A stretch of DNA of 32,000 nt from Wallemia ichthyophaga EXF-994 (GCF_000400465.1 NW_008806283.1:120001-152000), one strand, 5' to 3'. Shown: positions 2,563 through 32,000, numbered from the stretch's first letter. Notes: a model not told the origin generated them from the sequence alone. Made by a program: numbers and translations.

Positions 2563-2617
2563 ACCTACTCGACGCGCTAATACCAGACTAAAAGTGAGAC
2601 TAATAAAATTGAGTAGA

Positions 2618-2625
2618 TATAAAAG
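2618..2625 (+). promoter_or_regulatory. TATA box upstream of the hydrophobin gene
   Basis: TATAAAAG lies about 55 nt upstream of ATG 2678, followed by an A/C-rich leader. Confidence 0.55.
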
Positions 2626-2677
2626 TCAAAAACGCTCCTGATATAATACTACAATCAAACACACTTTGAATCTCACA

Positions 2678-4007: not shown

Positions 4008-4056
4008 CTAAGAACAGAGTCAGCTATGATACGGCTGCGCATATACCATTACTTAC
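4008..4056 (-). other. Consensus spliceosomal intron outside any CDS (probable 3'-UTR intron of the giant gene)
   Basis: Minus strand reads GTAAGT...GCTGAC...TTCTTAG, 49 bp, matching the size of the other introns. It starts 69 nt after the stop at 4126. No open frame spans it. Confidence 0.55.
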
Positions 4057-4125
4057 CTAGGTATATACACGAATTAATAAAAACAAGTAACGAGAGTAAT
4101 AAGTCTGGGGTATTAACATACGCGA

Positions 4126-13685: not shown

Positions 13686-13918
13686 TAGCTCTCTTTATGC
13701 CCGCGTCAGCTGTTATCGACATATAAAAACTCCACTCACAGCTGCTCAAGCACTGCAGCCTCCTCTGGCCGTAGATCTTCATCTTGATCTACTGACATTG
13801 TCTTTCTTTTTTGTTTCTTTTTTTTCCTCGTGGTTGTCGTTATGCAACCGTAAATGCCGTGATGATCAGGCATCTTTTTAAATATCTAAATTCGTAATTA
13901 AATCAATTGACACTATAT

Positions 13919-14113
13919 TCACGCGTTTCTACATCTAGATCCCCTTTTGGCCCCTCCTCATCACGCGTTTTCCCTTCCGCCCCTGTTCACTCACCTTCTA
14001 CTCCACTTTAGGTTCAAAAATTTTCGGAAAAGTTTTGTGTGGGGTGCGGAATATATTTGTGTGGAACATGTTTCAAAGGTGTGCTGTGCAAGACATGCTT
14101 ATTTTTCGCGTTT
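13919..14113 (-). promoter_or_regulatory. Candidate MCB/SCB-like cell-cycle boxes upstream of the giant gene
   Basis: TCACGCGTTT at 13919-13928 and 13961-13970; TTTCGCGTTT (minus strand AAACGCGAAA) at 14104-14113. All lie in a ~540-bp intergenic region, long for this window. Confidence 0.4.
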
Positions 14114-14226
14114 AAATACCTTTAAATCAACTTTAAGTGCGTTTGTGACGTGACTTTATGCACGGTAATGCACGGTGGCGTGAGTTAATGTGATACCATG
14201 TGATTTAAAAGCCTATAGAGTGTATA

Positions 14227-16289
14227 TCATCTGCAATATGTCAAACTTGTACACACGAATATTTTACTTAAGATTATTTTGTTGAGTTGCTGATCAAACA
14301 ACGGTACATTTCTATAACCTAAGAAGGGAAGTGTAATAGTTAGCAGCGTCACAACCACACACACTCCACAAACCCACCTAATTGCATCTGTGCGAGTGTA
14401 ATGGCGTAGCTAGCCACAGCCTCCTCATGCTGACTGCTAAGCACATCAAACTTGACGACGACAAGGTCTATCATGTTCCCTCTAACATTAACGTCGAAAC
14501 TGAGTGTTTCATTCCATGTAGGGTTTCCTTCCACCTGCCCATGCGATTGCAAATTTGCCGTGCTGGTGAAGCGTTTAAGACAAGTGTCATTATTGAAGGA
14601 ACGCGGTGTGTGCACCTCTACCGCCACTTTATTCACATTCTTCGACACTTGCTGCGCGCATATCACCTTAATGGAAAGACGCACCAGCCCCTTCAATTCC
14701 ACCATCCTCTTCTCCTCCTTGTTGCGCAAAGGTGATGGTTTCAACACATACCCGCCTGTATCATTGAACAAGGCGAAATTCAACCACATGGCCAAGTCCA
14801 CCGTCTGGTAATTGAGCGCTAACAGTTGCGATCCTACCGCCCAATAATCTAATACATCAAAATTAGTACTCTTCACTCTTGCTCCGTGTGGGTATATCCT
14901 TGTGAGATGATTGCGGTTGTGCTTCATAAACTCCCCACTACTCGCGTTTATCAGCTTCCGCGCTGATCTGTCAGACAAACTGAACATATGCTCTATTTCG
15001 TAATGCTCTTTCTTGTTGAAGCCTCGAAACTTTACACCCACTGTGTAGATTAGCAGATCGAGTAATTTCTGTGACATTTTAGTGTTATTTGTGTTAACTG
15101 CGTTATCCGTGTTATTCGTGCTCGTCGTCGAGTTGAGATTCCCAAATGAGTCGACAAGTGTGGGCGAGGTGGATGCAGTTGAAGATCTGTCAGATGAAGA
15201 TGCAGTGCTTCTTCGTCGTGTGACTTTCTGTATAAAGTTGCTCAACTTGCTCTTTTCAATGTCAGAGCTTGATGAGTGGGAGTGAGAGTGGGAGTAATCG
15301 GATGAGTTTGAGTTAAGTGCAACGTCAAAGCCATCCACCTTACTTGCCGCACTACTCCCACTTGCACTGGTTATGTGCAGGTTTTTAGTCTTGAATAGAA
15401 TCTTGTAGCGTAGTTGGTGTGGAGACGGTAGAATGTCTCTATCGTGTTGTAGCCTCTGAGTGATTAGCAAGTCACCGAGAATATCCACAAACAACCCAGC
15501 CATTCTATCTTGCTGTGCTAGATCACAGTGGTTCTCCACAGATAAAATCAAAGGCAGATTAGAAGAAATAAAGGCGAAAGTGTTGATTGTGGTGAGTATG
15601 TCGATTAGGGGGATGGGTTGGGTGAGAGTATGGCCGTGGTAGACAATAGGCCAACCATCGTCACCATTCCAAACGTCAATTTCTACACTTCTACAGCCCA
15701 GTAAGAGTGAGCGTATGTAGCCGATAGTGGTGGAAGAGCCAGCAAGTTGATTACCAAAGAGGTATGTGTTATGGGAAGCGCTAATGTAATAATTATAGAG
15801 TGGTTCATTTTCTGTGGTATTTTGTGGTTTTTGCAATGAATTCTCATTGGATTGAAGGTATCGATTGAATTGGAGTGTATTGAGTTGTGAAGGGGTGGAA
15901 TTGCATACGAAATCTTGCTGAGTGTGTTTTACAAACTCCTTGAAGTCATTTGGAGTGGATATTGGCAGGTAAGATGTATTATGAGTGCTGGTGCTGCTGC
16001 TAGAGTGTTTATCACCGGTAAACTCGCTGTGAAGGAGAATGAGATGCTTTATAAATGATTGATTCCCCCCTTGTAAATCAAACAAATCTAACTTTTTAAA
16101 TTTATTTGTCTTTGAGCTATTAAAGTAGATTGATAGGTGTGATCCATTTGAGTCGATGTAGACAATATCACTGAGTGGAATCAAACCCTCTTTCTTTGAA
16201 TTATATAGCAATCTCCGATCAGACAGTACAAATTCCTTTAATTTCACTTTTTTATTCGTTATTTTCATTAATTTCGCTTTGGAATCCAT
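14227..16289 (-). CDS. PLC1: Phosphoinositide-specific phospholipase C (PH, X, Y, C2; ~667 aa)
   Basis: X-box YYISASHNTYL..GCRSVEIDVW..VYHGHTLT..LSVENHC; Y-box RIYPHGARVKSTNF..GSQLLALNYQT; C2 domain. Last intron 14377-14319 (GTGGGT..TTAG) gives the typical tail GYRNVPLFDQ. First ATG is at 16289. Confidence 0.95.
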
Positions 16290-16308
16290 AGCTCTGGTGG
16301 CTTGGGAA

Positions 16309-16654
16309 ATGGCTTCGACATCAGAGAACAAGATATCCAATTTGGTGGGTTTTCATGGGTTATAATAATGAATAAGCTAATGGCCTTGATAGACAGACAA
16401 ATGCGTCGCTAACTTTGCAGTCAAAGCAGCAGCTGGATTGGGTGTTGGCGTGCTCACATCAGCCATCATATTCAAGAGAAGAACGTGGCCAATTACGTTG
16501 TTTACCGGATTCGGTGCTGGATATGCATACTCAGACTGCAACAGGTTGTTTAATCCATTGGCAGGTGGGTGAAATGTGTTTCTGATTTACAAACTAAAAT
16601 TGCACAGTACCCGGTTTAAAGATACAACAGCCAGATCAAGCTGATCAAAAATAG
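16309..16654 (+). CDS. MIC10: MICOS complex subunit Mic10 (84 aa)
   Basis: Not in the ORF track. Exons 16309-16344, 16393-16564 and 16608-16654. Protein: MASTSENKISNL-TDKCVANFAVKAAAGLGVGVLTSAIIFKRRTWPITLFTGFGAGYAYSDCNRLFNPLAVPGLK. It shows the GxGxG motifs in both TM segments and the KRR loop characteristic of Mic10. Confidence 0.92.
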
Positions 16655-17003: not shown

Positions 17004-18377
17004 TCAGTCGAGTCTTCTCTTATAAACCTCCAAATCAACGCCATGACTCGCAAGCAATCCCAATAAATGTCCCTGGGAGTCGATACTCTCACCGCTGTAC
17101 TTGATTCGCTCATGGATAATCCTCACCATAGCCTCATACTTAGCATCCTCCACCTGCCAATTAGGATGTTTAACTTGGACAGGCTGAGTGATTTCCACCG
17201 CTCTCTTGAGGAATACCTGACTGTTATTGATTAGTGTGGTATAGTTTACATTCCCGCTGCCAACGAGCAGAGCTCTCAGTGTCGACGCACCCGCGACAGC
17301 CATAAGGATCTTAATTTGGTTAGCGAGTGACTGAGGATCGATACTGCCGATGGATTTAAGTGCTATTTCCATCTCGAGTGCTGCCTTGAAGAGGGACTGC
17401 GCCTCACATAGCAATTCCCAGCTGGAGACGCCTGAGACGCCACTCTTAGCCACTTCTACCAACACCTCTGCCAGCTCGCAGTGTGCTTCTACTGCCCCGC
17501 TATCTCTTCTCCCGCTGCGCAACTCGAGCACGTGTCTAAACTCAGCCACTATTGTTTGAGCCTGTGATTGAAATTGCGGTTGTGGTTGTGATTGCGATTG
17601 TATTTGCATCTGCAACTCTCCTAGGTGTATTTTGGCCTGTAGGAGGAGAAGCGTGTCTGTCTCCTTGAACTGCTCATCGACTGCGTTGTTGAGGGTGAGT
17701 GCCTCGTTGAGGGCCATCTGCGCGTGTGCCAGAGTGTGATCAGTGTTTGTGCTAGTGCCATCATCGACATCGACCACATCCTGCAATTTGAGCAGCACAT
17801 CAACGAGAATTTTGATATTCTGCACGATTTGATAGGGTGGGAGGGAGAGTGAGAGTGAGGCGCCGCCGCCAACATCCATAGCAGCAGCAGCAGCATAACC
17901 ACCACTGTCCGCACCCACAAAAGACTTCTGTTCTGCCACTAAACCGCGCAACAAATCGACGCAATGGGAGAAGGCATCAGCAGCGTCACGATCCGCCCCC
18001 AAATCAGCATGCAGTTCACCAACAGATACAGCAGACTGAATTGCGTTGTAGAGAGCGTCAAACCTGCCGATTTGGTTGGGTGGGTTGAATCGACCAGCGA
18101 CCTCCGCCGCGCTGATGAACAAACGATACGCCTCTTGCAGATAGACAAACGCGTCCGGAGGATGCTTATAGCCGCCACCAATCTCTAGACGTAGGCGAGC
18201 AGAGTTGTAGAGTGCGTCGTAGTGACTGCCCTGCTCACTCTCAAGTACCGCCGCATAGAGCGACAAGGCCTTCTCGTATCTCGCAACAACTTTCACGTCG
18301 TATCCCAATCTCTCAGCCTTATCTTCAATGTCCACCGCTTCGTCGTAGATTTCTTCTATGTCTGTGTGTTTGGGCAT
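17004..18377 (-). CDS. TPR-like alpha-helical protein (457 aa), possibly UPF0656-like
   Basis: Long clean ORF. Repeated helical units such as YEKALSLY..YDALYNSARL and FDALYNAIQS. Family assignment is tentative. Confidence 0.7.
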   Translation of the reverse strand: MPKHTDIEEIYDEAVDIEDKAERLGYDVKVVARYEKALSLYAAVLESEQGSHYDALYNSARLRLEIGGGYKHPPDAFVYLQEAYRLFISAAEVAGRFNPPNQIGRFDALYNAIQSAVSVGELHADLGADRDAADAFSHCVDLLRGLVAEQKSFVGADSGGYAAAAAMDVGGGASLSLSLPPYQIVQNIKILVDVLLKLQDVVDVDDGTSTNTDHTLAHAQMALNEALTLNNAVDEQFKETDTLLLLQAKIHLGELQMQIQSQSQPQPQFQSQAQTIVAEFRHVLELRSGRRDSGAVEAHCELAEVLVEVAKSGVSGVSSWELLCEAQSLFKAALEMEIALKSIGSIDPQSLANQIKILMAVAGASTLRALLVGSGNVNYTTLINNSQVFLKRAVEITQPVQVKHPNWQVEDAKYEAMVRIIHERIKYSGESIDSQGHLLGLLASHGVDLEVYKRRLD

Positions 18378-19632: not shown

Positions 19633-21081
19633 CTAAAGCATCCCCTCTACACCCATCCACAGCAGGAACCTCGTGAACAAACTAACTTTACGTTGTGGCT
19701 GCTTGAATGTCTTCTCACTAACCTCAGTACTGCAGCTATTCAATTCCTCTACCTCCCCTTGCAGCCTCTTTTTCAGCTCGCCACTACTCGTCATCAACAG
19801 AAAACTCAACTCAAGGTCGAGATTGCTACTTCGTCCACTGAGGTTCGAACTGCCGATGAGAGTGGCCATAGCATCATCTGCACTCTTCTCATTACGTATC
19901 CATAGCCCTTTGCAGTGGTAAGTCCAACCATTTCTCCGCCATTCTTTCAATTGGAGTGAGTTATGGCGGTGGTGTTTGATAGACGATGTGTAGAATTTAC
20001 TCATTAGATGCGTATATGCCTCCGGTATACGCCCACTAACTCCCCTGCTACCTAAAAATCCATTAGCATCCGGTGATGCAGCTATTATCCATGTCGGTAC
20101 TCGACTCTCCATTACGCGCCGCTTGTAACCCCCACCCAAGCTAAAGTAACCAGATGTCATGTGAAGTATAGCGCCAGGAATGCTGTTGATTGCGTCAAGA
20201 AGATAGTGCACCGAATCCTCCTCCTCCCTCACACCCCACAAACCAGACTGGATGAGCGGATAAATGGTGGTGTCGTATTGTGGCTGGTCTACTTGTTCAT
20301 TACTCATGCGACACTGTCTGCGAGTGAAGTGTTCCATCTCCTCACGCGCTTTATCGCTGAATGCACTAGCTGGTGCATCATTCTCCCATCGCACATCATC
20401 TGAGTCGCACAGTTTATAACTGAAGCGCGTCATTAACTCGACAAAAGCGCGTAAATAGTTGGATAACTGGAAATGATCAGTAATTTGCATATATCTGTCT
20501 TGTCTGTTTGTGAAATAAGACGTGTTTAGATTCGCCCCCGAAAGAAGAACAGTGTCATCGAAGCAGTATATCTTGGTGTGTTGTGTACCAAAACCTTCTA
20601 TAAATCTGGGCGGTATAAACCGTTGTAAGATGCCCAAATTGGTGTTTGGTTTGTGGAGAAATACCCTCACTCTATTGCCAAAGAGGCGTACCAGAGGGGA
20701 AATCAGACTGGCTGGTGAGTGTGGTGGGTGTGCTTGGCGTGTAAACCTATTGAAATCGGCGAGTATAGTGACTGTGAGCTGCTGATTCTCTCTCAGACGC
20801 CGCTGCAACAGTCCCACCAACTCATTCTGTTCTTCGCCGATATAGAGGGTGGAAATGTAGATAGAGCGTTGGGCTGTGTTTATATGATGTATAAATCGCC
20901 TATGGAAGTCAATAGGCTTGCTCAACAAGTCAATTTGCTTCGAATTTGCTTTGAAAGAAGGGTGTCTGTTGCACAGCCAGGGGTATAATTCATCGATGCG
21001 ATGTGGGTGATGTGTGCCGTGACTTGTGCCTTTAATTGGAATCTTCGGGATCTGATTGAACCAGTTCCTTAAGAAACCCAT
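19633..21081 (-). CDS. PGS1: CDP-diacylglycerol--glycerol-3-phosphate 3-phosphatidyltransferase (482 aa)
   Basis: PLD-superfamily motifs QHTKIYCFDDTVLLSGANLNTSYFTNRQDRY and WTYHCKGLW; IYISTLYIG; TLIGSSNLSGRSSNLDLE. Confidence 0.95.
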   Translation of the reverse strand: MGFLRNWFNQIPKIPIKGTSHGTHHPHRIDELYPWLCNRHPSFKANSKQIDLLSKPIDFHRRFIHHINTAQRSIYISTLYIGEEQNELVGLLQRRLRENQQLTVTILADFNRFTRQAHPPHSPASLISPLVRLFGNRVRVFLHKPNTNLGILQRFIPPRFIEGFGTQHTKIYCFDDTVLLSGANLNTSYFTNRQDRYMQITDHFQLSNYLRAFVELMTRFSYKLCDSDDVRWENDAPASAFSDKAREEMEHFTRRQCRMSNEQVDQPQYDTTIYPLIQSGLWGVREEEDSVHYLLDAINSIPGAILHMTSGYFSLGGGYKRRVMESRVPTWIIAASPDANGFLGSRGVSGRIPEAYTHLMSKFYTSSIKHHRHNSLQLKEWRRNGWTYHCKGLWIRNEKSADDAMATLIGSSNLSGRSSNLDLELSFLLMTSSGELKKRLQGEVEELNSCSTEVSEKTFKQPQRKVSLFTRFLLWMGVEGML

Positions 21082-21130
21082 CAAATACTCCCGATGACTG
21101 TCTTCTCGATACCATCACTACCGACAATAG

Positions 21131-22890
21131 ATGATTGATGATTTCTACGAATATTTATCTAACAAATCCAATGGAATCGCTGTAGATCATCTAAAACTGG
21201 TTAGCTGTCTTCTACTGAGCTACCCACTCTCTCACTGTGAGCCCAACCACTAAATACGGTATCATCCACTCAAAGTCCCCTAGTATTCTTGCGTATTCCA
21301 CCTCAATATCCAAATCTACGTCACGCCTTTAATCTATCCTCTTCTCTTTTCTTCCTTGTCGGGATATTCTCACTTAAATGGGGTCTAATCAACCTCATCC
21401 TAAACTCTGTCATTAGTTACTCCCTGGCACACACTCTATCCAGGTACAAACACATGCCGTGGATCGTTATGGCTTTTGCCATGTCACACCTCCTATGTTT
21501 CCACCTACGACGCCTAATCCACACTACTCCCTCAACCTCGGTCGAAATCAGCGGTAGTCTGATGGTTCTCATCCAGCGTACAACCACCTACGCCTGGAAT
21601 GTCCATGATGGCTGCTGTACCGATGCCGAATTGCAGGAATTGCAGGATCACCAGAAAGACAACCGCGTCACCCACAAACCCTCCCTCCTCGCTTTCCTCG
21701 CTTACACTCTCTACTTTCCCGCCATCCTCGTCGGTCCTGCGTTCCCATACGACGCGTATGCCAGTTTAGTGGATGATAGTCTATTTGAGACACCGCGCCC
21801 GCGCAAGCTCAAACTCAAAGGACGCAGACGGGCTGGATATCGTAGAATGGTATTTGGGTTATTTTTTTTGGCCATCTACGCGGTGTGGGGGGGATCCGCT
21901 GATATGTCCCGCCTCATTGACCCTGCCTGGCAGCGCAACCACACCATTCTGCGCCGCATCCTCTTCGTGCAGAAAGCAGGCGTCATTACTCGGTTTAAGT
22001 ACTACGCAGTCTGGTCCATCTCTGAGGGCGCGTGCATCATCTCGGGTCTCGGCTTCAATGGCTACAACGCCGCTAATGGGCGCACGCGCTGGGATCGGGT
22101 GCGCAATATCGACGTGCTCAGCGTAGAGCTGGCGCAGAACATTAAGGAGCTACTAGACGCGTGGAATATGAACACTAACATTTGGCTCAAGACTTGCGTA
22201 TATCTTCGCATCACTAGTCGTGGTGAAAAACCTGGTTTCGCGTCCACCCTCTTCACCTTCCTCACGAGCGCTTTCTGGCACGGCCTGCCTTTGGGTTACT
22301 ATCTTACATTCGTCTTCGGTGGGTTCCTCCAAGCTCTGGGGAAGATGGTGCGCAGGAATGTGAGACCGTTTTTCATCGCTACTGATAAACAAGGTGAACA
22401 AATTGAACAAGGCAAACACCTCAAATACCTCTATGATGTACTCTCCATCATTACCACACAGACGCTCATCAACTTTGCCGTTATCCCCTTCCTGCTTCTT
22501 GATTGGAGAGATAGTGTACGAGGATGGAATAGCGTGTGCTGGTATGGCGTAGTGGTGGTCGCGTGTGCTTTCGCCTATTTCAAAGGTTTCGGTGGCGTAG
22601 GGAGGTTACAGAGCAGACTACAGAAGCAGCAACGCGATGATACGCTCAACGACCTCCTCTTCGACGCCACCCCTACATCTGAGTTGAGAGATAGGGTGGG
22701 GCTGGACGAGGAGCTGTTGACAAGAGACGTTGACGAAATGATTCAGAAACTACTCTCTAATGGCTCACTCGCCAGTCGCGAAGCTGCGGATCAGATTAAG
22801 GATATGAGCAGCGACGGGAAGGCTATAACAAAGGCAGCGGTTAAAGACGCTGTTGAGGGAAATAGAAGTGGGAGTGGGAGTGAAATTTAA
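21131..22890 (+). CDS. ALE1: MBOAT lysophospholipid acyltransferase (570 aa)
   Basis: Exon 21131-21236, intron 21237-21283 (47 bp), exon 21284-22890. N-terminal HLKLVSCLLLSYPL; RFKYYAVW; AWNMNTNIWLKTCVYLR; catalytic-His motif TSAFWHG..GYYLTF. Confidence 0.95.
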
Positions 22891-23152: not shown

Positions 23153-24088
23153 ATGGTAGATACACAACCAGCCAGTCTGCACTCACTACCTGCTGAGTTG
23201 CTGGATATGGTGTTGATACTGCAGCCGCAACTCGCAAAGACATGTAAATACCTCTACAACCTCAATCTAAAGAACGATTTCGCCATCGTTAGAGGTCCGG
23301 GTTGCAAAATACGCGGGGTGTCCCACTACACATTCTCAGAAACTCCCGTTAAGCTTATCGGTGGTTTTAACGGGCAGCTGAAACGAATGACGATACTACC
23401 GTGTGCAGATTACATCAGAAAGCTTTACGTGAATATGCACAACACCAAGTCAGGTAGGTGGGGGTGAAACGTCGAAATCCGGGGATGATGAGCGCATAAA
23501 TAACTCAAAACAGGTAAAATGGGCTCGTATATCAACACACTAGCTAATCACGTTTGCGCATTCACCAACCTCCACCAGCTGACAGTAACGTTGAGTTCCC
23601 TTTACCACATACTTGCTATGAAGAATATTGTCATGGAGAATATATCCACGCTGGTGCTCGAATGCAGGAGTTTCTACCTCGAAGATAGTGAGCCGGATGA
23701 TGTGGTGGACTTGCTGCTCACCTCCTTCCCCAATCTCGAGAAAGTGCTCTTGTACGCCGGGAATGACTTCAGAGGCTCGGCGGAGAAACTTAAGAAAGTG
23801 TTTAGCGAGAAAATGCCAGCCTCTAGATACCTACAATATGCTGTTATATTATATAGGAGCTGGAGCAATGTCTCCTTGACATCGACAATGGTTTACCTCA
23901 ATGAATACATACGGGTAGGTGGAGGTGGACGTGAACACGGAAATTTGAAATACACACGCACAGCTCTCGCCCCAATATGCACACCAAATCTGCTCAAGGT
24001 ATCACCCACTATCAGCCGCGTTCTTGAGAAGATGGCAGTGTCTCACGATATAACCCAGCTGCATCACATCACGATTGGATATGAATGA
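23153..24088 (+). CDS. F-box-like / LRR-like protein (291 aa), probably lineage-specific
   Basis: Intron 23454-23513 (GTAGGT..AACAG, 60 bp) joins two track ORFs in phase. N-terminal LHSLPAELLDMVL is F-box-like; FTNLHQLTV and FPNLEKVLL are LRR-like. Confidence 0.65.
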
Positions 24089-24205: not shown

Positions 24206-25231
24206 ATGAGGTAGGTGCAGTGATTATCAAGCTCTGGGTGATCTCACGGTGACCAGCTTCAATGACTTGGAAAGTGGAGGCGTGCCACTGTCTACGCCCA
24301 ACGAATCACCCGGCGTTTCGAGTGGGTTGAGCGGATATACAAAGCACAGCTCACAGCTCTCACCAACAACAGATGAGTTCATACAGCTCAAAGATAAGCT
24401 GAGCATTAGTATATTTAAAATAAACGGTAATATACAAGGTATCAACCGTATCGTAGCTGTTTTGGGCACAGCGAAAGAGCAAGGTGACTCACGGGACAGA
24501 CTACATGAGCTACTTGAGTCTACAAGGCTCATTGTCAAGAATACCACTGAGAACGTGCGTAATTTTACAAACTGGGATTATGGCGCACATCCGGCGAATA
24601 GTCCACAGATAATACGCAACACGCAGTCCAAGATTAGCAGAGACTTTAGTGGAGCTTTGCAGTCATTCCAGAGAGTGCAGAAGGATGCAGCGGAGCGAAC
24701 GAAATTGTCGACGGAGAAGGAGCTGTCGAGAAGAGTTGAAGGGGCAGCCCAGCCAGCCCAGCCCGATGAGGTGCTGTATAATCACCAGGATATATACCAG
24801 GGAGAGTTGCAAGAAGAGCAGCAGCAGCAACAGGAACAACACCAACAACAAATACACCCGCGTAGAATCACAGAAGCTGAAATGGCATACCAAGATGGAT
24901 TAATTGAGGAGCGTGATCACGAGATTAGAGATATTGAGACGTGCGTGTTTTATAAAAAAAAAAAGCTCTGGCTACTGCTCACACTCCACACAGCGGTATA
25001 CACGAATTAAACGACATTTTTAGAGATCTAGGTGGAATTGTCGTTGAACAGGGTGGAATGCTCGACAATATAGAGTCAAACGTAGATAATATCTCCTCAG
25101 ATGCCAACAGAGCTAATGACCAATTAATTTCTGCGCACGAGTACCAGCGTAAAGCGGGAAAGAGAGCACTATGCTTATTGCTAATACTTACAATAGTAAT
25201 ACTGATTGTAATACTCGTTTTGATTTTATAA
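24206..25231 (+). CDS. PEP12: Qa-SNARE syntaxin, Pep12/Vam3/syntaxin-7 type (308 aa)
   Basis: Exons 24206-24210, 24257-24940 and 24994-25231. Habc helices; SNARE motif EERDHEIRDIETGIHELNDIFRDLGGIVVEQGGMLDNIESNV; C-terminal TM LCLLLILTIVILIVILVLIL. Confidence 0.9.
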
Positions 25232-25322: not shown

Positions 25323-26885
25323 ATGCAGATCAAACACAATGCCAATGAATTCCTAGAGCCCACCTCACCCACCATATCACCCGCGTTGATTTACTTTATA
25401 CAGAACAGCTCCCCTTCCAATCACGATGAAAGTCCTCAGTCTCAGAAAGTAGCGAGGTCAACACCGACGGTTTCCAGCCCCAAATTTGAATCGACTACGG
25501 CAGAGTTGAATAAGCGGCCGCTTTCTACTATGTTCAATAACGTTGGCAGTGCGTCAGGGTCCACGAGTAGTCACGCGCATGCACATACGCATACACACAT
25601 ACAAACACAAACACACACACTGGAAGAAGACTTCAGATCGGATATGCGGTCTAATAGGTCGTCTACAGGTACACTAGGTACCATCACGAGGAATAGTCTC
25701 AGAAGAAGAACTAAACCAAGTCTCCAGCTCTTCAACTCGCCTACAAGCAGCCATCAACCACAAGAACATCAATCACCTTATACTCCCACACTAAAACCAT
25801 CTTCAACCCATCATAGAAATTTATCAACGGAATACCTCTCTCATAAAATACAAGGATGGATGCCAAATTTCACAAACTCACTCTCAACTCCTCAGATTTC
25901 GACGGAGTCTTCTTCGTATGACAATAACCACAAAGAGTCCAAGGACTCGAAAGATAACAGCAAACGTGGTATGCTCGGTAAAGCATTCTCGAGTTTACAC
26001 TTTAACGACTTGGGTAAGTCTAGTCCCCAGAATAGCATCCTCAACTACAGATTGCGCATTGGATACCCAAATCAGCGTTTAGTATTTGGTGCATGTTTGT
26101 GGCAATCCACATACACAACTAAGATTGATAAATCTCCTTCGCTATGGAAAATACCAATTGAAGCAAAAGAGTACTTGCCATGTCTGGTAATCAGATGCTT
26201 TGAATATCTCATTCAATGGGCAATGGTTGAAGAAGGTATTTTCAGGATTTCAGGGAAGTCTTCACAGATATTACAACTTCGCAATGAATTTGATAGCGGG
26301 AGTGATATCTATTTGAGAGATATACATCCTTCCATACTAGATCCACACGCCGTTGCATCAATATTCAAAGCTTATTTAAGGGAATTACCACATAACATAC
26401 TCACAAATGAGAATATACCACAATTCAACGATTTCATGCAGATATCATATAAAGTAAATGCAGTTACCTCAGATGACACACCAGCAGCTGCATTAAAGTG
26501 TAACTATAAACAATGCGATCAAATTGACAGTAGTGATGTCGATTTGAAGCTGTTGAAAGATATTCTATCAGAACTACCGCATTCAAACTATTGGTTATTA
26601 CGACTAACGATGAAAATTCTTAAGTTGACAGCTGATAATAGTGAGGTGAACAAAATGACCCTATCAAATCTAGTACTCGTAATATGTCCGTCAGTTTGTT
26701 TATCAGCGATATTCGTCAAAATTTTAGTCAAGCACTTTGATTATCTTTTCGGGATTGATCATGTATTCGAAGATAGTGAGGATGATGAGCTTAGTTATTT
26801 GCGTCCAGAAACAAGCCAGCTGGTGTCATCTAGTGGTGAAAGAAGGAAGTTCAAGCTACTAAGCAGCAAGCGTGATAAGAAGTAA
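25323..26885 (+). CDS. RhoGAP-domain protein (520 aa)
   Basis: LPCLVIRCFEYL..EEGIFRISG (arginine finger)..DPHAVASIFKAYLRELP..NKMTLSNLVLVICPS; Ser/Thr-rich disordered N-terminus. First ATG is at 25323. Confidence 0.92.
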   Translation: MQIKHNANEFLEPTSPTISPALIYFIQNSSPSNHDESPQSQKVARSTPTVSSPKFESTTAELNKRPLSTMFNNVGSASGSTSSHAHAHTHTHIQTQTHTLEEDFRSDMRSNRSSTGTLGTITRNSLRRRTKPSLQLFNSPTSSHQPQEHQSPYTPTLKPSSTHHRNLSTEYLSHKIQGWMPNFTNSLSTPQISTESSSYDNNHKESKDSKDNSKRGMLGKAFSSLHFNDLGKSSPQNSILNYRLRIGYPNQRLVFGACLWQSTYTTKIDKSPSLWKIPIEAKEYLPCLVIRCFEYLIQWAMVEEGIFRISGKSSQILQLRNEFDSGSDIYLRDIHPSILDPHAVASIFKAYLRELPHNILTNENIPQFNDFMQISYKVNAVTSDDTPAAALKCNYKQCDQIDSSDVDLKLLKDILSELPHSNYWLLRLTMKILKLTADNSEVNKMTLSNLVLVICPSVCLSAIFVKILVKHFDYLFGIDHVFEDSEDDELSYLRPETSQLVSSSGERRKFKLLSSKRDKK

Positions 26886-26954
26886 GAACAAAAATGTCTA
26901 ATTGTAAAAGTGTACTATTAAGAAATAATAAATAAATAACTCTATAAGGTAAAA

Positions 26955-27464
26955 TTACAATCTCTTGAAGAAAGATTTCAGACGTGAAGGAGTCTTTGTA
27001 GGTTGAGGATACTTGCAAGCCATGAATTGAGGTATAGATGATGTTTGAATTAAGTAGTTTACGTGTTCGTATGCTTTCGTGAAGCAATCCGGATGTGTTG
27101 AAGTGCGGAGTAGATCGAGTGTGTATGATTGGATATCTTCTGGGAGATTTAGTTCAAATTGGCTGAGATTGTTGAAGTAGACGCTGATTATGTGATCAAC
27201 TTCACGTCTATATGGTTGTTCTTGTGTGTTTATGCTAGTCTTCTTCCTCCACTTGTTTAATCTACACGAAGGTGACTTATCCTGCTCTATTCCACTCAAT
27301 CCACTCCATCTACTCTTATAAGATAAAAACCACAAGATAAAGTTGAGATTCTCAATCGAGTGCTCCTGGTATTCTAAAAATGTCCTAAAATCCTCCGCCA
27401 ATTCGTTATTATTGAGTATTTCCGCCAGTGTTTGCACATTTTTCCCCGTTCTCCCCGTTCTCAT
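26955..27464 (-). CDS. Stand-alone RGS-domain protein (169 aa)
   Basis: LAEILNN..FRTFLEYQEHSIENLNFILW..IISVYF..ELNLPEDI..HPDCFTKAYEHVNYLIQTSSIPQF is an RGS-fold signature. Confidence 0.85.
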   Translation of the reverse strand: MRTGRTGKNVQTLAEILNNNELAEDFRTFLEYQEHSIENLNFILWFLSYKSRWSGLSGIEQDKSPSCRLNKWRKKTSINTQEQPYRREVDHIISVYFNNLSQFELNLPEDIQSYTLDLLRTSTHPDCFTKAYEHVNYLIQTSSIPQFMACKYPQPTKTPSRLKSFFKRL

Positions 27465-27514
27465 GTGATTGTCCAACAACAGCAATATAGCTATAAAAAT
27501 TATTACAAATACCT

Positions 27515-30500
27515 TTACAATAAAAGATCAAGTTGTTGTTTCAATTCCGTTGATATTTTCAAATATTCATTACGTTGTGCCTTGGCTACGCTTAAATCCC
27601 GTGCCATTTTTTCAACTCCATCAACGGCATGCACATCCGCATACATACCGTCGAGTTCCTCATTGAATGATTCGTATAGAACGCTTATCTCACTCTTGCA
27701 TTCATTCAATTGCTTCTCTAGCTTGTGCGTGCGTTCTGCGTCTGCTTTTTGACGCTGTTGCAATTGTCGCGCTACCTGTACTTGCAATTCAAGTGATCTT
27801 TCCATTTCCGCGAATGAATTGCTGTCGATTTGGCCGGATTTAGTCTTTTTCAGTGTTCTTGCGTCATCTGATAGCTGTATTGTGTGTCAGATGGGTATGA
27901 ATGGCACTCCACCGAACTCACACTGTCTATAAGGAAATTGAGACTTTCATCGGTAGTGCCTGCACTGTGACAAATCTCTTCCCACTTGCGTTTCCTCTCG
28001 CTCAAACCGACATCAACCCTGACAATCTCGGATTTAGGAGGAGGCATTATCTTACGGTCCTTGTTCTCCTTCTCTGAGGTATCAGCAGTGTCATTGTACA
28101 CCCACTCATCCAGTGCACTCGTGTAGCCGTAGCCATCCTCCGGCACTGACTTGGTTGACTTGGATGGTTTGAGTGGCTGTGGTTTTGGCTGTGACTCCGC
28201 CTTCACTTCCACTTGCTCCACTGCAACATTCTTACTTGGAATACTCAAAGGACGTACGACAGGCAAATCCATCTTGTACGCATTCCCGACTTTCGGAGTA
28301 GATTTAAGGGTGCTCCTGCTACTTGTGCTACCAGTACTACGGGTGAGATCGCGCGGTCCGAACGGTTTCCTTGCACCGGGCGACATTACTCCCGACCTCA
28401 GACCTGAACTTGTACCAGTACTGCGTGACCACGCGGACGAGTTGGTAGTCTGCCTCGACATACTGAATGCCGGTTCGGGGGGAATGAGTGAGCTGCTGAC
28501 GCTTTCCGGATGGGGTTGGTCAGGGCTAGTGGGAGTGGGTGTGTGGTTGGTGGTGTAAGTGTGAGAGTGCGTAGGTACACTCGTCGACCGCCGTCTGCTG
28601 ACTGTGTTCAATCCTGCTCTGCCCTCACGCACTATCGCTTCATCAGCCCCACCGGCTATGTAGGAAGGCTGGCGAGCTATTGCAGCTGCAATGTCTTCGT
28701 CTGTGTCGTTATCTGCCTCCTCTTCCGCATCCTCATAACGCGGGAATTGTGACGAATCATTCTCGCCGAATTTTAAGTCAACGCTGGTGGAATTAGAGAT
28801 AGTGCTGCCATTGCCGTTGGTGGCGTCGCTCGTGCGTGCATCTGTGTCACTACCGCAAGGCAGCGACGTCGAAGCGTCCGAGCGAGTGCTGTAATTACCC
28901 GCAGTAGCTAGGCTGCTATGAGAGCGGGGCGGGAGAGGTGGATCGAGTGGGTAACCATGTTCATTTTCATTCCCACTCTCACTCTCACTCCCACTATCAC
29001 TCCCACTCTTCTCACTCCTTGCAACGCTCACACCCACCACACCCACATTGCTCGAGGGAGGGGGAAGCGAGCGAGGTCTTTCGAGATAGGAAGCACGCAC
29101 GCCATCCCTGTAGTCGAGCATTTCCACCTCTTCCTCGGCCTTAGCAACAGCCAGGCGGCGCTCGTGGTCGATCTGTGCTTCCGTCGTCCTCCGCTTGTGT
29201 AGCTCGCGCGCAACGGCTTCTGCCTCAGCCTCCCGCTCGGCGTCAGCTGCAGGTGGCGTCTGCTTGCGTTTCACCTTGCGCTCGAATACGGCCGGTGCTG
29301 GCGGCGATTTGGGCAGTGGGCTGGGTGTACGCGTGTGAGTGTGTGCAAGGGTGGAATGAGAAGGCGCCGATCCGCGATGATCTACCGACGTTGCAGGTGT
29401 AGATGTCACCTCGCTGTTTACACTCCCCATTGTTAAATTACCGCTCGACTTGCTCGCTAGTGAGCGTGTGCGGCGGTGCGAGTGTGAATTGGTAGAGTTC
29501 GTGAGGTCTGCGTCAGGTACACCCAGCCTCCCATTGGCAACACCCGCGCCGTGCTTGAAGAAGCCCCTAGATACGCTCTCGAATTTGTTCTTTGTCGGTG
29601 AAGATGGTGCCCGCTCACGCTTGCGTCCTCCCACTGTCAGATTTGGCGCTAAGCCAGCAGGTGTATAGTCGTACAGACGTGCCGCTTGGATATGCCACAC
29701 GAGACGTTCGTAAACGCCAGCCATATCCACACTCTCTTCCAACTCTTCGGGTGGACTACTGAAAGTCGTGGTAAGGTGCACGTCGTCGTGTTCGTTGTTG
29801 ACTTGCGCACGCATCACTATTAGTGGACAAGTGCCTGCCTCGCCGAGTGGAATGGCATCAGCAACCCCTCCGCTCCCGTCCATGTGTAAAACTGCTTTGC
29901 TTTTGTGTGCTGATCTGAACCACTGGTCACGGGATGTGTACACATTGTAGTAGAGTCGAGCTCGCCCACTCCCCCGCCCACTGCTTACACCACCACTCTC
30001 TAATGGCAACCAGTCGCGGGATATCTTGGCACAGGCATCTCCGCCGGTTGACAATGTACTTAAAATGGCCTGCTGTTTCCATGTACTCGAAATGAACCGC
30101 GTCATTGGACTGTCCGTTGAGAGAGGTTCTGATGGAGAGAAAGACACTTGCGTTGCGGAGAAGGCTTTGGAGGATCTGTTAAACCGCTCATCGTCACAAT
30201 CAGCGAACGCTGAGTTGTTGAAGACAATACCGAGTTCTGAATTGTGTGTTAGTGGGTTACTAACACAGGAAAAAAACCAGTCACCTTGATGTGATAAATC
30301 GGTCAAAGTTACATCTGATAGGTCAGCAACAACTTTACAAACCAGTTGATGCTTTGCTATACCAATTCCCCAGGATTTGGCGGGTGTGGATGAAGGATTG
30401 GAAGCGTCCAAGTCATCAAGACCGGAGAGTTTGCGACCTCTTGCGTGAGCAGAGGGACGCTTAGCGATGACCAACTTATCGTTGAAGAGGAAGAGAGTGC

Positions 30501-31347
30501 ATGGGAGAGGGTCGTCAATGTGACTAGTAAGAGGAGTTGGAAGGTCGTCAACGTCGATGGAGTCGATTAGAGTGCGATTGTGTGAGATGAGATTTGGGGG
30601 AAAGTCTTGGATGTTTCTTTGGAGAGTGTGCATTAGAGTGGCACGTTTAGTAGTCTCGTCAGCTTCACAGGAGGCGATCTTTGAGGCTAAATCGAGAGCT
30701 TGAAAGAGTAGGGAGCGTTGATCGTGAGATTGGTCAAGATAGTTCATCATACCTTGAAGGAGGAGGATATAGCGGGGGATTCGTTGGACAGGCTCCATTA
30801 GCAGCTCTCTTAAGCCAATATTGTTGATACCCGTAGTCTGCCATTGGGTTCTATCGATGAATTCGACAAAAGATTTCTTCTTCAATAGGTCCTTGAACAG
30901 TTCAACGGATTTCTGCCTGTTAAAGTAATATTGGTTGTAAGGAGTGAGATAGGGAAAGTGAGACATGCAAATATTCCCTATGTTAAATTCATTCGCGTGT
31001 TCTAATTCGGTGAGGAAGGAGTAATTGATGTGCAAAATCTGATCAATGTTTGCAAATAAAGATTTGGCGTCAAAGTGGTTTATGATTTGAGTGTCTTTGT
31101 GTTTAGCGAATTGTCTCAATGGATCGGCGTAATTGAGTTTGAGAGCAGTGATCCTTTTAACGTAAGATTTCTCAGTGCTGATTAATTCATTGAGTTGCTG
31201 TTGAAATGATTGTATATTCGGAGATTTGGTTGGTGGTGGTGGGAGAGACGAGGAGTTCAGGGAAGGAGAGATGAGATTCTCGCCGATGTCCCAATAACAA
31301 CCATCAAATACAACATCACAGAAGAAAGCCTTATGCTGTGATGACAT
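27515..31347 (-). CDS. RhoGEF (DH domain) with long disordered region and C-terminal coiled coil (~1,245 aa), Gef2-like architecture
   Basis: DH motifs LNELISTEKSYVKRI..LFANIDQI..LRELLMEPVQRIPRYILLL; PH-like LFLFNDKLVIAKR. In-frame 48-bp intron at 30284-30237; intron 27921-27875 (GTGAGT..TACAG) joins the 27515-27805 coiled-coil ORF. Confidence 0.9.
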
Positions 31348-31445
31348 ATTTTTAATTATTTAATTGATATTGATGGTTCAATTCAAACTACCAAATTCGG
31401 TTGGTGTTGGGCAGCAATTAATTAAAAATCTTTTGGTAAACAACG

Positions 31446-32000
31446 ATGAAGAGGAGATCGACAGTTTGTGGATATGAGTTTACGTGTGAGCCATCAACAA
31501 CGCCAACAACGAAATCATCATCATCATCCTCATCGTGCTTGTCTTCCACTTTAACGAAAACAACTTCAATCTCCTCTAGATCTTTATCAATTACGGATAA
31601 GAGCGTTATAAGGAATTATCATTTACTACTTGAGTTGGTTAATACTGAGACGCAATACTACAACGACCTACGAATACTGGTAAACGTTTACTTGGACAAC
31701 CTACCCAAAGCCCTATCCTATCCAACTAGAAATCTAATCAAAAGAAATATTTCATCTATTCTCGCTTTACATTCACGTATAACGGCTTCTATTAACAAAG
31801 TACTCGATGATGAGCACTTGCAGCTAGATACCTTCACCATTGGTCCTGGTTCTGCTATTCACAAGCGCACAATTGACAGATGTACTGATAAAGTTGCAAA
31901 CAGCTTCATCGATCAAGCACCTTACTTCGACATATACAACGAATTCTGCGCTAATCACCCACGTGCCTTATCGAAATTATCCTCCTCCTCTAACCTCCCC
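31446..32000 (+). CDS. Second RhoGEF (DH domain), 5' partial, runs off the window end
   Basis: Frame is open from ATG 31446 to the window end, so it is missing from the track. It reads HLLLELVNTETQYYNDLRILVNVYL..IKRNISSILALHSRI..FIDQAPYFDIYNEFCANHPRAL, a DH-domain CR1 and following helices. Confidence 0.85.
   Translation, partial: MKRRSTVCGYEFTCEPSTTPTTKSSSSSSSCLSSTLTKTTSISSRSLSITDKSVIRNYHLLLELVNTETQYYNDLRILVNVYLDNLPKALSYPTRNLIKRNISSILALHSRITASINKVLDDEHLQLDTFTIGPGSAIHKRTIDRCTDKVANSFIDQAPYFDIYNEFCANHPRALSKLSSSSNLP

What the first reader, a model, noticed from the sequence alone, without database searches (positions are those of the whole stretch)
25323..32000. Four consecutive GTPase regulators: RhoGAP, RGS, RhoGEF, RhoGEF
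Seen: four adjacent genes, all GTPase regulators (one Rho off-switch, one G-alpha off-switch, two Rho on-switches), preceded by a syntaxin. The two GEFs are divergent with 98 nt between ATGs; RhoGAP and RGS converge with a 69-nt gap. Established: in animals RGS and DH domains are fused in p115RhoGEF/LARG to couple G-alpha to Rho. Inference: a physically clustered G-protein-to-Rho signalling module (polarity, septation or osmotic response). I know no such described fungal cluster.
Basis: partly seen in the sequence, partly recalled or inferred. Interest (0 to 1): 0.72.

Follow-up and report, generated by a model that had tools for sequence, protein, structure and literature searches.

The report
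Rho and G-protein regulator genes adjacent
In the salt-loving fungus Wallemia ichthyophaga four GTPase-regulator genes really do sit side by side, but only the pairing of the two Rho activators (RhoGEFs) is old and shared with mushrooms; the Rho off-switch (RhoGAP) and the G-alpha off-switch (RGS) are neighbours in Wallemia only, and no link between them is shown.

Summary
The window is Wallemia ichthyophaga DNA. It encodes, in order, a syntaxin, a RhoGAP (25323-26885 +), a 169-aa RGS-only protein (26955-27464 -), a Bud3/Gef2-type RhoGEF (GEF1, 27515-31347 -) and a second DH-PH RhoGEF (GEF2, from 31446 +). The 69-nt and 98-nt gaps are as described.

One correction: GEF1 has a further 3' exon (the 96-aa coiled-coil ORF). 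It therefore ends only 50 nt before the RGS start codon.

With 12 RhoGEF, 7 RGS and 7 RhoGAP genes among 4884, about 3e-6 runs of four are expected under random gene order. The order is kept in four Wallemia lineages.

Outside Wallemia no RGS or RhoGAP lies within 10 kb of either GEF in nine genomes. GEF1 and GEF2 are adjacent in Tulasnella, Serendipita, Coprinopsis and Rickenella, in other orientations. In Wallemia they share a short divergent promoter that holds a conserved 12-mer.

GenBank models that fuse GEF1 and RGS are annotation artefacts. None of the four genes appears in the published list of salinity-responsive genes.

Verdict: an old RhoGEF gene pair plus neighbours specific to Wallemia. 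A G-protein-to-Rho module is not shown.

The parts
24249..25231 (+). Syntaxin gene (Pep12/Vam3-like t-SNARE). Two exons are resolved, with a 53-nt intron at 24941-24993. The 5' exon holding the ATG is not resolved.
   Evidence: Pfam Syntaxin_2, 91.6 bits. The W. mellicola orthologue carries Syntaxin_2 plus SNARE. The splice was reconstructed.
25323..26885 (+). RhoGAP gene, a single 520-aa ORF. The GAP domain is aa 286-458 and the arginine-finger motif GIFRISG is present. The N-terminal 280 aa are low-complexity.
   Evidence: Pfam RhoGAP, 106 bits. The best solved relatives are the GAP domains of RalBP1, RICS and p50RhoGAP. It is collinear with the W. hederae and W. mellicola orthologues from aa 1.
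26886..26954 (.). 69-nt gap between the convergent stop codons of RhoGAP and RGS. The two 3' UTRs must abut or overlap.
   Evidence: Read from the sequence.
26955..27464 (-). Stand-alone RGS-only protein, 169 aa, ATG at 27464.
   Evidence: Pfam RGS, 41.8 bits. The orthologues in W. hederae and W. mellicola are stand-alone proteins of 168-174 aa. The exact 169-aa protein is in the reference genome. The AF2 model has pLDDT 73 and all top Foldseek matches are RGS domains. The SxEN and ELNL motifs align to RGS1/RGS2.
27465..27514 (.). 50-nt spacer between the GEF1 stop codon and the RGS start codon, same strand.
   Evidence: The same spacer is 109 nt in W. mellicola, about 0.35-0.5 kb in the metagenomic lineage and 2.39 kb in W. 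hederae.
27515..31347 (-). GEF1, a Bud3/Gef2-type RhoGEF of 1245 aa. CDS exons are 31347-30285, 30236-27922 and 27874-27518, followed by the stop codon at 27515-27517. The DH domain is aa 52-226, followed by a PH-like region, a long disordered region and a conserved C-terminal coiled coil.
   Evidence: Pfam RhoGEF, 115 bits. It matches the reference protein 'Rho guanine nucleotide exchange factor gef2', EOR00694.1. Orthologues score E of about 1e-80 across Agaricomycotina, and some reach the PH_BUD3_C threshold. The C-terminal coil is conserved.
27491..27648 (-). The 158-nt 'intron' of the GenBank MAKER models (E3P91_03059 and others) that fuse GEF1 to RGS. It is in fact coding sequence for the last 44 aa of GEF1 plus the intergenic spacer.
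   Evidence: Differences from W. hederae fall 4, 3 and 13 on codon positions 1, 2 and 3. The annotation method used no RNA evidence.
31348..31445 (.). 98-nt divergent promoter shared by GEF1 and GEF2.
   Evidence: The same head-to-head layout is found in four Wallemia lineages, with 102-nt and 117-nt gaps in W. hederae and W. mellicola and about 295 nt in the metagenomic lineage.
31389..31400 (+). Conserved 12-mer TACCAAATTCGG (pattern TACCAAAWWCGG) inside the divergent promoter. It is a candidate transcription-factor site.
   Evidence: It occurs once in the window (0.01 expected by chance). It occurs once in each Wallemia locus and always in this spacer. It is absent from the nine other loci.
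31446..32000 (+). GEF2, a DH-PH RhoGEF. These are the first 185 of 1211 aa (P0129); the gene runs off the window.
   Evidence: Pfam RhoGEF, 53.7 bits on the fragment and 107.5 bits on the full P0129, plus weak PH and SOS1_NGEF_PH hits. The window matches P0129 at 100% identity.

Best explanation
The region holds five separately transcribed, ordinary genes of Wallemia ichthyophaga: syntaxin, RhoGAP, a small RGS protein, a Bud3/Gef2-type RhoGEF (GEF1) and a second DH-PH RhoGEF (GEF2).

The cluster has two layers of different age.

(a) The GEF1-GEF2 adjacency is old. The same two unrelated GEF subfamilies are neighbours in at least four orders of Agaricomycetes. In Wallemia they lie head to head and share a promoter of about 100-300 nt that keeps a 12-nt element. 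The most likely working relation is therefore co-regulated transcription of two Rho-family activators. By homology, GEF1 would act on a Rho4- or Cdc42-type GTPase in septation or cell division. This is an inference.

(b) RGS and RhoGAP became neighbours of this pair only in the Wallemia lineage, in a very gene-dense genome. They persist there as part of general collinearity across the genus. Nothing found here couples them functionally to the GEFs.

Shown: the gene identities, gene structures, synteny pattern, conserved motif and the fusion artefact. Inferred: co-regulation, GTPase targets and a septation role.
For: Species: GEF1 is 100% identical to W. ichthyophaga proteins.

Within-genus synteny:
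- W. hederae and W. mellicola have the order PLD-MBOAT-X-syntaxin-RhoGAP-RGS-GEF1-GEF2.
- A more distant metagenomic Wallemia-like lineage (RGS 44% identical; GEF2 58% identical to W. hederae's) keeps syntaxin-RhoGAP-RGS-GEF1-GEF2, with X-MBOAT-PLD moved to the other side.

Old GEF pair:
- GEF1 orthologues are adjacent to a second RhoGEF in Tulasnella, Serendipita and Coprinopsis (tail to tail) and in Rickenella (tandem).
- These neighbours are GEF2-type. They score 100-229 bits with each other and with Wallemia GEF2, against 20-50 bits with GEF1-type proteins.
- The Tulasnella, Rickenella and Coprinopsis neighbours themselves are among the best 150 of 1.84 billion representative proteins for a GEF2 profile, as is a close relative (88% identical) of the Serendipita neighbour.
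- Tulasnella has adjacent locus tags, FRB95_000747 and FRB95_000748.
- The DH domains of GEF1 and GEF2 share only the CR3 motif, so the pair is not a recent duplication.

Promoter motif.

No RGS or RhoGAP near the GEFs outside Wallemia.

Compact genome: 514 genes per Mb, with coding sequence covering about three quarters of the genome.

Bud3-family GEFs act on Rho4 or Cdc42 in septation and cytokinesis: PMC5999796, PMC4294672, PMC7328677 and Justa-Schuch 2010 as cited in PMC4424799.
Against: - A run of four such genes is very improbable under random order: 3e-6, or 7e-5 given the pair. 'Just neighbours' is therefore not a comfortable null.
- The block stayed intact in the one lineage whose flanks were rearranged.
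- The 50-, 69- and 98-nt spacers leave room for transcriptional coupling among all four genes.
- The GEF pair is missing in Auricularia, in two Tremellomycetes and in Ceraceosorus. Its orientation differs between Wallemia and the Agaricomycetes, so independent origin or neutral retention cannot be excluded.
- No expression data were available to test co-regulation.
- The motif's binding factor is unknown.
Confidence: 0.5

Rival explanations
1. All four genes form one functional, co-regulated G-alpha-to-Rho module. The RGS protein senses or terminates G-alpha-GTP, the GEFs and the GAP set Rho, Cdc42 or Rac activity, and physical linkage ensures joint expression or joint inheritance.
For: - The run is statistically improbable.
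- The order is kept in four Wallemia lineages, although RGS identity falls to 44% and GEF2 identity to about 60-70%.
- The block survived a rearrangement of its flanks.
- Spacers of 50, 69 and 98 nt force the transcription units to overlap or be shared.
- RGS-RhoGEF coupling exists in animals, Entamoeba and Naegleria (PDB 4gou is among the fold matches).
Against: - RGS and RhoGAP are not near either GEF in any of nine non-Wallemia genomes.
- The syntaxin and other unrelated neighbours are conserved in Wallemia just as well.
- Among the 213 GEF1 homologues found (the best 120 listed with their Pfam domains), the only listed one that also carries an RGS domain is the artefactual W. ichthyophaga model.
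- W. hederae has 2.4 kb between GEF1 and RGS.
- None of the four genes is in the salinity-response list.
- There are no interaction or expression data.
Confidence: 0.15
2. Nothing here is functionally constrained. Both the four-gene run and the GEF1-GEF2 pair are neutral leftovers of ancestral gene order and of genome compaction, picked out after the fact.
For: - The finding was selected post hoc from a scan.
- With a broad 'signalling' class of about 300 genes, a run of four is expected in 6-7% of genomes.
- The genome is extremely compact.
- The pair's orientation is not conserved: head to head, tail to tail and tandem.
- The pair is absent in four of the sampled genomes.
Against: - The pair persists across the split between Wallemiomycetes and Agaricomycetes. 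The authors estimate that split at about 250 My.
- The RGS-GEF1 adjacency, the one other adjacency the fetched loci allowed to be tested, is not kept outside Wallemia.
- The adjacency persists through changes of orientation.
- A 12-mer is conserved in an otherwise diverged shared promoter.
Confidence: 0.3
3. GEF1 and RGS are one gene in W. ichthyophaga. As in the GenBank models E3P91_03059 and others (1359-1399 aa), it would encode a fungal DH-RGS fusion protein, at least as an alternative isoform.
For: - A consensus GTATGT donor (27648) and a TATAG acceptor (27491) join the two reading frames in frame.
- Only 50 nt separate the two genes.
- Nine such models, covering at least 21 GenBank protein entries, exist in the population-genomics annotations.
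Against: - The 'intron' removes 44 codons that are conserved in all Wallemia and are weakly recognisable in Agaricomycotina. Their substitutions are biased to third codon positions.
- The reference annotation of strain EXF-994, whose genome paper also sequenced the transcriptome, has a separate 1245-aa GEF and a separate 169-aa RGS.
- The fused models come from MAKER without RNA evidence, in annotations that hold about 700 fewer genes than the reference.
- The sister species have stand-alone RGS genes, one of them 2.4 kb away from GEF1.
Confidence: 0.05

Closest known systems
Bud3 / Gef2-type fungal RhoGEFs (S. cerevisiae Bud3, S. pombe Gef2, Neurospora BUD3, Fusarium FgBud3)
   Same: GEF1 has an N-terminal DH domain followed by a PH-like region and a long tail. 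Its basidiomycete orthologues reach the PH_BUD3_C threshold. The reference annotation names it 'gef2'. Family members activate Rho4 or Cdc42 at the division site (PMC5999796, PMC7328677).
   Different: The window protein itself does not score on PH_BUD3_C; it gives only a weak ECT2_PH hit. Its GTPase target in Wallemia is unknown. No paper found here mentions a conserved neighbouring second GEF.
Animal RGS-RhoGEFs (p115RhoGEF, PDZ-RhoGEF, LARG) and the protist RGS-RhoGEFs of Entamoeba and Naegleria
   Same: An RGS-type domain and a DH domain are physically linked in the genome. The Wallemia RGS looks like a canonical RGS domain, as in the protist proteins, and keeps the SxEN motif and the Asn of ELNL.
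   Different: Here they are two genes and two proteins. The RGS gene lies downstream of the GEF, not N-terminal to the DH domain. The linkage is confined to one genus. The only fused models are annotation artefacts.
Conserved divergent gene pairs with a shared bidirectional promoter (for example yeast GAL1-GAL10 and histone gene pairs; from general knowledge)
   Same: GEF1 and GEF2 start 98-117 nt apart (about 295 nt in the metagenomic lineage), head to head, in four Wallemia lineages. A 12-mer in the spacer is conserved.
   Different: In Agaricomycetes the same two genes are neighbours but lie tail to tail or in tandem. A shared promoter therefore cannot be what kept them together throughout. 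Co-expression has not been tested.
Two-GEF control of one GTPase in septation (Neurospora BUD3 and RGF3, both acting on RHO4)
   Same: A Bud3-type GEF is paired with a second, unrelated DH GEF.
   Different: GEF2 shows only DH and PH in Pfam, with no third domain, and its DH domain is closest to those of P-Rex1, Asef and Tiam1. From memory, RGF3/Tus1-type GEFs also carry a CNH domain, so GEF2 does not look like an RGF3/Tus1 orthologue. A shared target for GEF1 and GEF2 is speculation.

Membership tests
RhoGAP (PF00620) | Domain profile match above the curated threshold | tested here: met
   106.3 bits against a cut-off of 24.5, aa 286-458.
RhoGAP (PF00620) | Catalytic arginine finger (GxFRxSG motif) | tested here: met
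   EGIFRISGKSS aligns to the EGIYRVSG motif of RalBP1. That this motif carries the arginine finger is general knowledge.
RhoGAP (PF00620) | GTPase-activating activity on a Rho-family GTPase | not testable with these tools
   Needs a biochemical assay.
RGS (PF00615) | Domain profile match above the curated threshold | tested here: met
   41.8 bits against a cut-off of 23.9. phmmer against the PDB finds nothing. A profile of six orthologues reaches RGS2 and RGS1 at E of 2e-4 to 4e-4.
RGS (PF00615) | All-helical RGS fold | tested here: met
   The AF2 model has pLDDT 72.9. The best 34 Foldseek PDB matches are all RGS domains, and TM-scores normalised to the target are 0.5-0.65. Model confidence is moderate.
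RGS (PF00615) | Residues that contact G-alpha (the SxEN motif, and the Asn of the alpha5-alpha6 loop) | tested here: met
   HSIENLNF aligns to FSEENIEF, and ELNL aligns to EINI of RGS2/RGS1. Both are invariant in the six orthologues. The role of these residues is taken from general knowledge of RGS4.
Dbl-homology RhoGEF (PF00621) | DH domain profile match, for both GEFs | tested here: met
   GEF1 scores 115 bits. The GEF2 fragment scores 53.7 bits and full-length P0129 scores 107.5 bits.
Dbl-homology RhoGEF (PF00621) | PH domain directly after the DH domain | tested here: inconclusive
   GEF2 gives PH and SOS1_NGEF_PH hits at E of about 0.02, below threshold. GEF1 gives an ECT2_PH hit at E 0.03.
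Bud3/Gef2-type GEF | PH_BUD3_C domain (PF25351) after the DH domain | tested here: inconclusive
   It is not detected in the window protein. It is detected above threshold (28.3-28.8 bits against 27) in the orthologues P0022 and P0024, and it is precomputed for about ten other orthologues.
RGS-RhoGEF fusion proteins | RGS and DH-PH domains in one polypeptide | tested here: not met
   The stop codon is at 27515-27517 and the C-terminal 44 codons are under coding constraint. The reference genome has separate 1245-aa and 169-aa proteins. The sister species have separate genes.
Functional gene cluster (all four genes) | Linkage kept beyond the general collinearity of close relatives | tested here: not met
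   No RGS or RhoGAP lies within 10 kb of GEF1 or GEF2 in Trametes, Saitozyma, Tulasnella, Auricularia, Serendipita, Kwoniella, Ceraceosorus, Coprinopsis or Rickenella.
Functional gene cluster (GEF1-GEF2 pair) | Linkage kept across classes | tested here: met
   The two are adjacent in Wallemia (four lineages), Tulasnella, Serendipita, Coprinopsis and Rickenella. Subfamily identity is shown.
Functional gene cluster (either) | Co-expression or shared regulation | not testable with these tools
   The only indirect evidence is the conserved 12-mer in the shared promoter. None of the four genes is in the salinity-response table.

The most novel reading that the evidence does not exclude
The Bud3-type and DH-PH RhoGEF genes form a selectively maintained gene pair across Agaricomycotina. 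In Wallemia that pair has gathered a compact cluster of four GTPase regulators with shared or overlapping transcription units. An RGS gene starts 50 nt after the GEF's stop codon, and the two GEFs share a 98-nt promoter. On this reading the cluster couples G-alpha signalling to Rho signalling through gene arrangement rather than through domain fusion, and would be a 'split' fungal counterpart of the RGS-RhoGEFs.
Probability: 0.12. Interest if true: 0.6.

Novelty: new member of a known kind. Interest (0 to 1): 0.35.

Why it matters
If the GEF1-GEF2 pairing is under selection, it is a rare case of a long-lived linked pair of signalling regulators in fungi, as opposed to metabolic gene clusters. 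It would also point to a concrete hypothesis: two GEFs expressed together for septation or polarity.

For annotation there is a practical result. The DH+RGS 'fusion proteins' of W. ichthyophaga in GenBank are merged gene models and should not be cited as fungal RGS-RhoGEFs.

If all of it is neutral, the region is simply a striking chance run in a very compact genome.

Tried and rejected
1. GEF1 and RGS as one gene. Rejected.
2. The two GEFs as recent tandem or inverted duplicates. Rejected: their DH domains share only the CR3 motif, and cross-family scores are 20-50 bits.
3. Gene X (23153-24088) as the orthologue of the F-box/LRR gene that lies near the GEF pair in Coprinopsis and Trametes. 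tblastn gave no hit.
4. A simple five-gene inversion in the metagenomic lineage. The left flank of L006 has no similarity to the flank beyond GEF2 in W. mellicola, so the rearrangement is more complex than that.
5. Word-indexed homologue search with the GEF2 DH domain. It returned only three Wallemia-like hits. The exhaustive profile search was needed.
6. Whether the second RhoGEF in Trametes, four genes from GEF1, is GEF2-type. Only its first 700 nt were in the locus, and they gave no hit. Left open.
7. Expression values for the four genes. The all-genes table was cut when stored and none of the peptides searched for occurs in it. The differential-expression table holds none of the four.
8. 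Literature support for reading the 12-mer as an Mcm1/MADS-type site, and for BUD3 belonging to the yeast CLB2 cluster. Neither could be confirmed in the paper library. Both remain recollections and are not used as evidence.
9. RGS or RhoGAP synteny seen from their own side in non-Wallemia fungi. The RGS search had found no relative outside Wallemia-like genomes.

Full report
**What is there.** The window is fungal DNA. The 1165-aa ORF at 27853-31347 (-) is 100% identical to Wallemia ichthyophaga proteins. The exact 169-aa RGS protein and the full GEF2 (P0129) are on record from a 430-kb scaffold of W. ichthyophaga, the same scaffold that carries EXF-994's gef2 protein.

- Syntaxin_2, 24249-25007 (+).
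- RhoGAP, 106 bits, in the ORF from ATG 25323.
- RGS, 41.8 bits against a threshold of 23.9, in 26958-27485 (-).
- RhoGEF, 115 bits, in 27853-31347 (-).
- RhoGEF, 53.7 bits, in the truncated ORF from ATG 31446.

The 69-nt convergent gap and the 98 nt between the divergent ATGs are exact.

**Gene structures and a correction.** GEF1 does not stop at 27850.
- A 47-nt GTGAGT...ACAG intron (27875-27921) joins it to the 96-aa coiled-coil ORF. The protein ends ...KQQLDLLL, with its stop at 27515-27517.
- This C-terminus is present in the W. hederae and W. mellicola orthologues. It is weakly detectable in the Trametes, Saitozyma, Tulasnella, Auricularia and Coprinopsis orthologues.
- A second intron of 48 nt (30237-30284, with an ACTAAC branch site) is removed in the reference protein EOR00694.1. 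That protein is 1245 aa and is named 'Rho guanine nucleotide exchange factor gef2'.
- The RGS protein begins at ATG 27464, only 50 nt after the GEF1 stop.

**The fused GenBank models are artefacts.**
- Nine W. ichthyophaga models from the population-genomics project (for example E3P91_03059, 1395 aa, with Pfam RGS plus RhoGEF) join GEF1 to RGS. They do so through a GTATGT (27648)...TATAG (27491) 'intron'.
- That 158-nt stretch encodes the last 44 residues of GEF1. These are conserved in all Wallemia species.
- Against W. hederae they differ at 4, 3 and 13 sites in codon positions 1, 2 and 3, which is the signature of coding constraint.
- The models were made with MAKER (Augustus trained on Laccaria, plus SNAP) without RNA evidence. 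The resulting annotations average 4188 genes against 4884 in the reference.
- The reference genome, W. hederae and W. mellicola all have a stand-alone RGS gene. In W. hederae 2.4 kb of ORF-poor DNA separates it from GEF1.
- There is therefore no fungal DH-RGS fusion protein here.

**The four proteins.**
- The RhoGAP carries the arginine-finger motif GIFRISG. Its closest solved relatives are the GAP domains of RalBP1, RICS and p50RhoGAP.
- The RGS protein is little more than the domain itself. A model built from six orthologues (pLDDT 73) matches only RGS domains at the top of a PDB fold search. A profile aligns its invariant HSIENLNF and ELNL motifs to the corresponding motifs of RGS1 and RGS2. 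It looks like a competent, canonical RGS domain.
- GEF1 has orthologues across Agaricomycotina at E of about 1e-80, and several reach the PH_BUD3_C threshold. The window protein itself does not, so I call it Bud3/Gef2-type by orthology.
- GEF2 (P0129, 1211 aa) is DH, then a weak PH, then a long disordered tail. Its DH domain is closest to those of P-Rex1, Asef, Tiam1 and intersectin.
- The DH domains of GEF1 and GEF2 share only the CR3 motif, so they are not recent duplicates.

**Is the run more than chance?**
- The genome paper's Pfam table gives RhoGEF 12, RGS 7 and RhoGAP 7 among 4884 genes.
- Random order then gives an expected 3e-6 runs of four. Given a pre-existing GEF pair, the chance that two more such genes adjoin it is 7e-5.
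- These figures are post hoc. With a class of 300 'signalling' genes the expectation is 0.07.
- The run is nominally very unlikely, but probability alone says nothing about function.

**Synteny within Wallemia.**
- W. mellicola and W. hederae have the same order, PLD-MBOAT-X-syntaxin-RhoGAP-RGS-GEF1-GEF2. In W. hederae one merged 1088-aa gene model hides the RhoGAP, the syntaxin and gene X.
- A more distant, metagenome-derived Wallemia-like lineage (L006/L007; RGS 44% identical to the window's, GEF2 58% identical to W. hederae's) keeps syntaxin-RhoGAP-RGS-GEF1-GEF2. There X-MBOAT-PLD lie on the other side, after GEF2, and the opposite flank is unrelated.
- The block therefore survived one rearrangement, but it did so together with the syntaxin.

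**Synteny outside Wallemia.** I fetched 10-kb flanks around GEF1 orthologues in seven genomes and around GEF2 orthologues in two.
- GEF1 side: Trametes, Saitozyma, Tulasnella, Auricularia, Serendipita, Coprinopsis and Rickenella.
- GEF2 side: Kwoniella and Ceraceosorus.
- No locus holds an RGS or RhoGAP gene, either by precomputed Pfam or by tblastn with the Wallemia proteins.
- GEF1 is directly adjacent to a second RhoGEF in Tulasnella, Serendipita and Coprinopsis (tail to tail) and in Rickenella (tandem). In Trametes another RhoGEF lies four genes away; its type could not be verified.

These neighbours are GEF2-type, on four grounds:
- Wallemia GEF2 hits them by tblastn and GEF1 does not.
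- The Tulasnella, Rickenella and Coprinopsis neighbours are among the best 150 hits of a GEF2 profile searched against 1.84 billion representative proteins, as is a close relative (88% identical) of the Serendipita neighbour.
- The Tulasnella neighbour is FRB95_000747, next to the GEF1 orthologue FRB95_000748.
- All-against-all BLASTP splits the proteins cleanly into a GEF2 group (100-229 bits within the group) and a GEF1 group (260-880 bits within the group), with 20-50 bits between the groups.

The pair is not adjacent in Auricularia, Saitozyma, Kwoniella or Ceraceosorus.

**The shared promoter.** In all four Wallemia lineages the two GEFs lie head to head, with 98-117 nt between the ATGs and about 295 nt in the metagenomic lineage. 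The spacers are otherwise diverged. All of them contain TACCAAAWWCGG once, and the motif occurs nowhere else in the window or in any of the 13 fetched loci; 0.01 matches are expected by chance in the window. From memory it resembles a MADS/Mcm1-type CC(N)AATT(N)GG site. I could not confirm that consensus in the paper library, so it is only a lead.

**Interpretation.** The cluster is composite.
- The GEF1-GEF2 linkage predates the Wallemiomycetes-Agaricomycetes split, which the genome paper estimates at about 250 My, or else it arose twice. In Wallemia it takes the form of a divergent pair with a conserved promoter element, so co-regulation is the most economical mechanism.
- Bud3-family GEFs activate Rho4 or Cdc42 at the division site in ascomycetes (PMC5999796, PMC4294672, PMC7328677, and Justa-Schuch 2010 as cited in PMC4424799). 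A role in septation or cell separation is therefore a reasonable inference for GEF1. W. ichthyophaga grows as multicellular clumps.
- RGS and RhoGAP are neighbours only in Wallemia. Its genome has 514 genes per Mb and coding sequence covers about three quarters of it. I found nothing that ties them functionally to the GEFs.
- The osmotic-response suggestion gets no support. No peptide from the four proteins occurs in the table of 639 salinity-responsive genes. The caveat is that gene models in that table could differ from mine.

**Novelty and verdict.** No paper in the library mentions Wallemia together with RhoGEF. RGS-RhoGEFs are described for animals, Entamoeba and Naegleria. The two papers in the library that mention both RGS-RhoGEF and fungi describe none in fungi. 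The individual genes are ordinary members of known families. What is new is the conserved GEF1-GEF2 adjacency and the correction of the fused GenBank models.

- The module interpretation is only partly supported.
- Interest is moderate to low unless expression or interaction data link the four genes.

Noticed in passing
window 14352-16340 (-), 19636-21084 (-), 21289-22887 (+): Three lipid-related enzymes lie just upstream of the block: a PI-specific phospholipase C (X, Y and C2 domains), a PLD-like protein and an MBOAT acyltransferase. The PLD-MBOAT adjacency is kept in all Wallemia loci, including the rearranged metagenomic one.
   Followed up: partly
window 4129-6543 (-), 6787-8034 (-), 8638-9684 (-), 9774-12593 (-), 12753-13685 (-), 17007-18377 (-): Six long ORFs (311-940 aa) in the GC-richer part of the window have no Pfam match at E<=0.001. 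What they are was not examined.
   Followed up: no
L001 (W. hederae) 7611-9980: A 2.4-kb spacer with no long ORF lies between GEF1 and RGS. It is absent from the other Wallemia species, whose spacers are 50 nt to about 0.5 kb. Its origin (degraded mobile element or other) was not determined.
   Followed up: no
L001 (W. hederae) 10613-14452: The annotated 1088-aa gene with no Pfam hit is a merged model. By tblastn it covers the RhoGAP, the syntaxin and gene X. This is the same kind of annotation merging as the W. ichthyophaga GEF1+RGS models.
   Followed up: yes
window 23153-24088 (+): Gene X, between MBOAT and the syntaxin, has two exons and about 293 aa. It has an F-box-like LPAELLDMVL motif near the N-terminus but no Pfam hit. 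It evolves fast, with only 37-47% identity within Wallemia.
   Followed up: partly
L013 (Rickenella mellea) 1-5102: A RasGAP plus CRAL_TRIO protein of 2749 aa (NF1/Ira-like) lies two genes upstream of the GEF1-GEF2 pair. It is another GTPase regulator in the neighbourhood and may be coincidence.
   Followed up: no
L003, L009, L012, L013 (Agaricomycetes): Other genes recur around the GEF pair in Agaricomycetes: RING-finger genes, DUF676, an LRR_FBXL15 gene with an amidohydrolase gene, and a Myb gene. This indicates wider conserved microsynteny there. No similarity to any Wallemia locus was seen in the tblastn runs made with the GEF2-type proteins; these flanking genes themselves were not used as queries, and the sequence beyond GEF2 is not in the window.
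   Followed up: partly
window 25323-26160 and 28400-29500: His/Thr-rich low-complexity runs (HAHAHTHTHIQTQTHT in the RhoGAP N-terminus; HTHTRTPSP and THSHTYTTNHTPTPT in the GEF1 tail) occur in both neighbouring proteins. They are probably encoded by CA-rich simple sequence.
   Followed up: no
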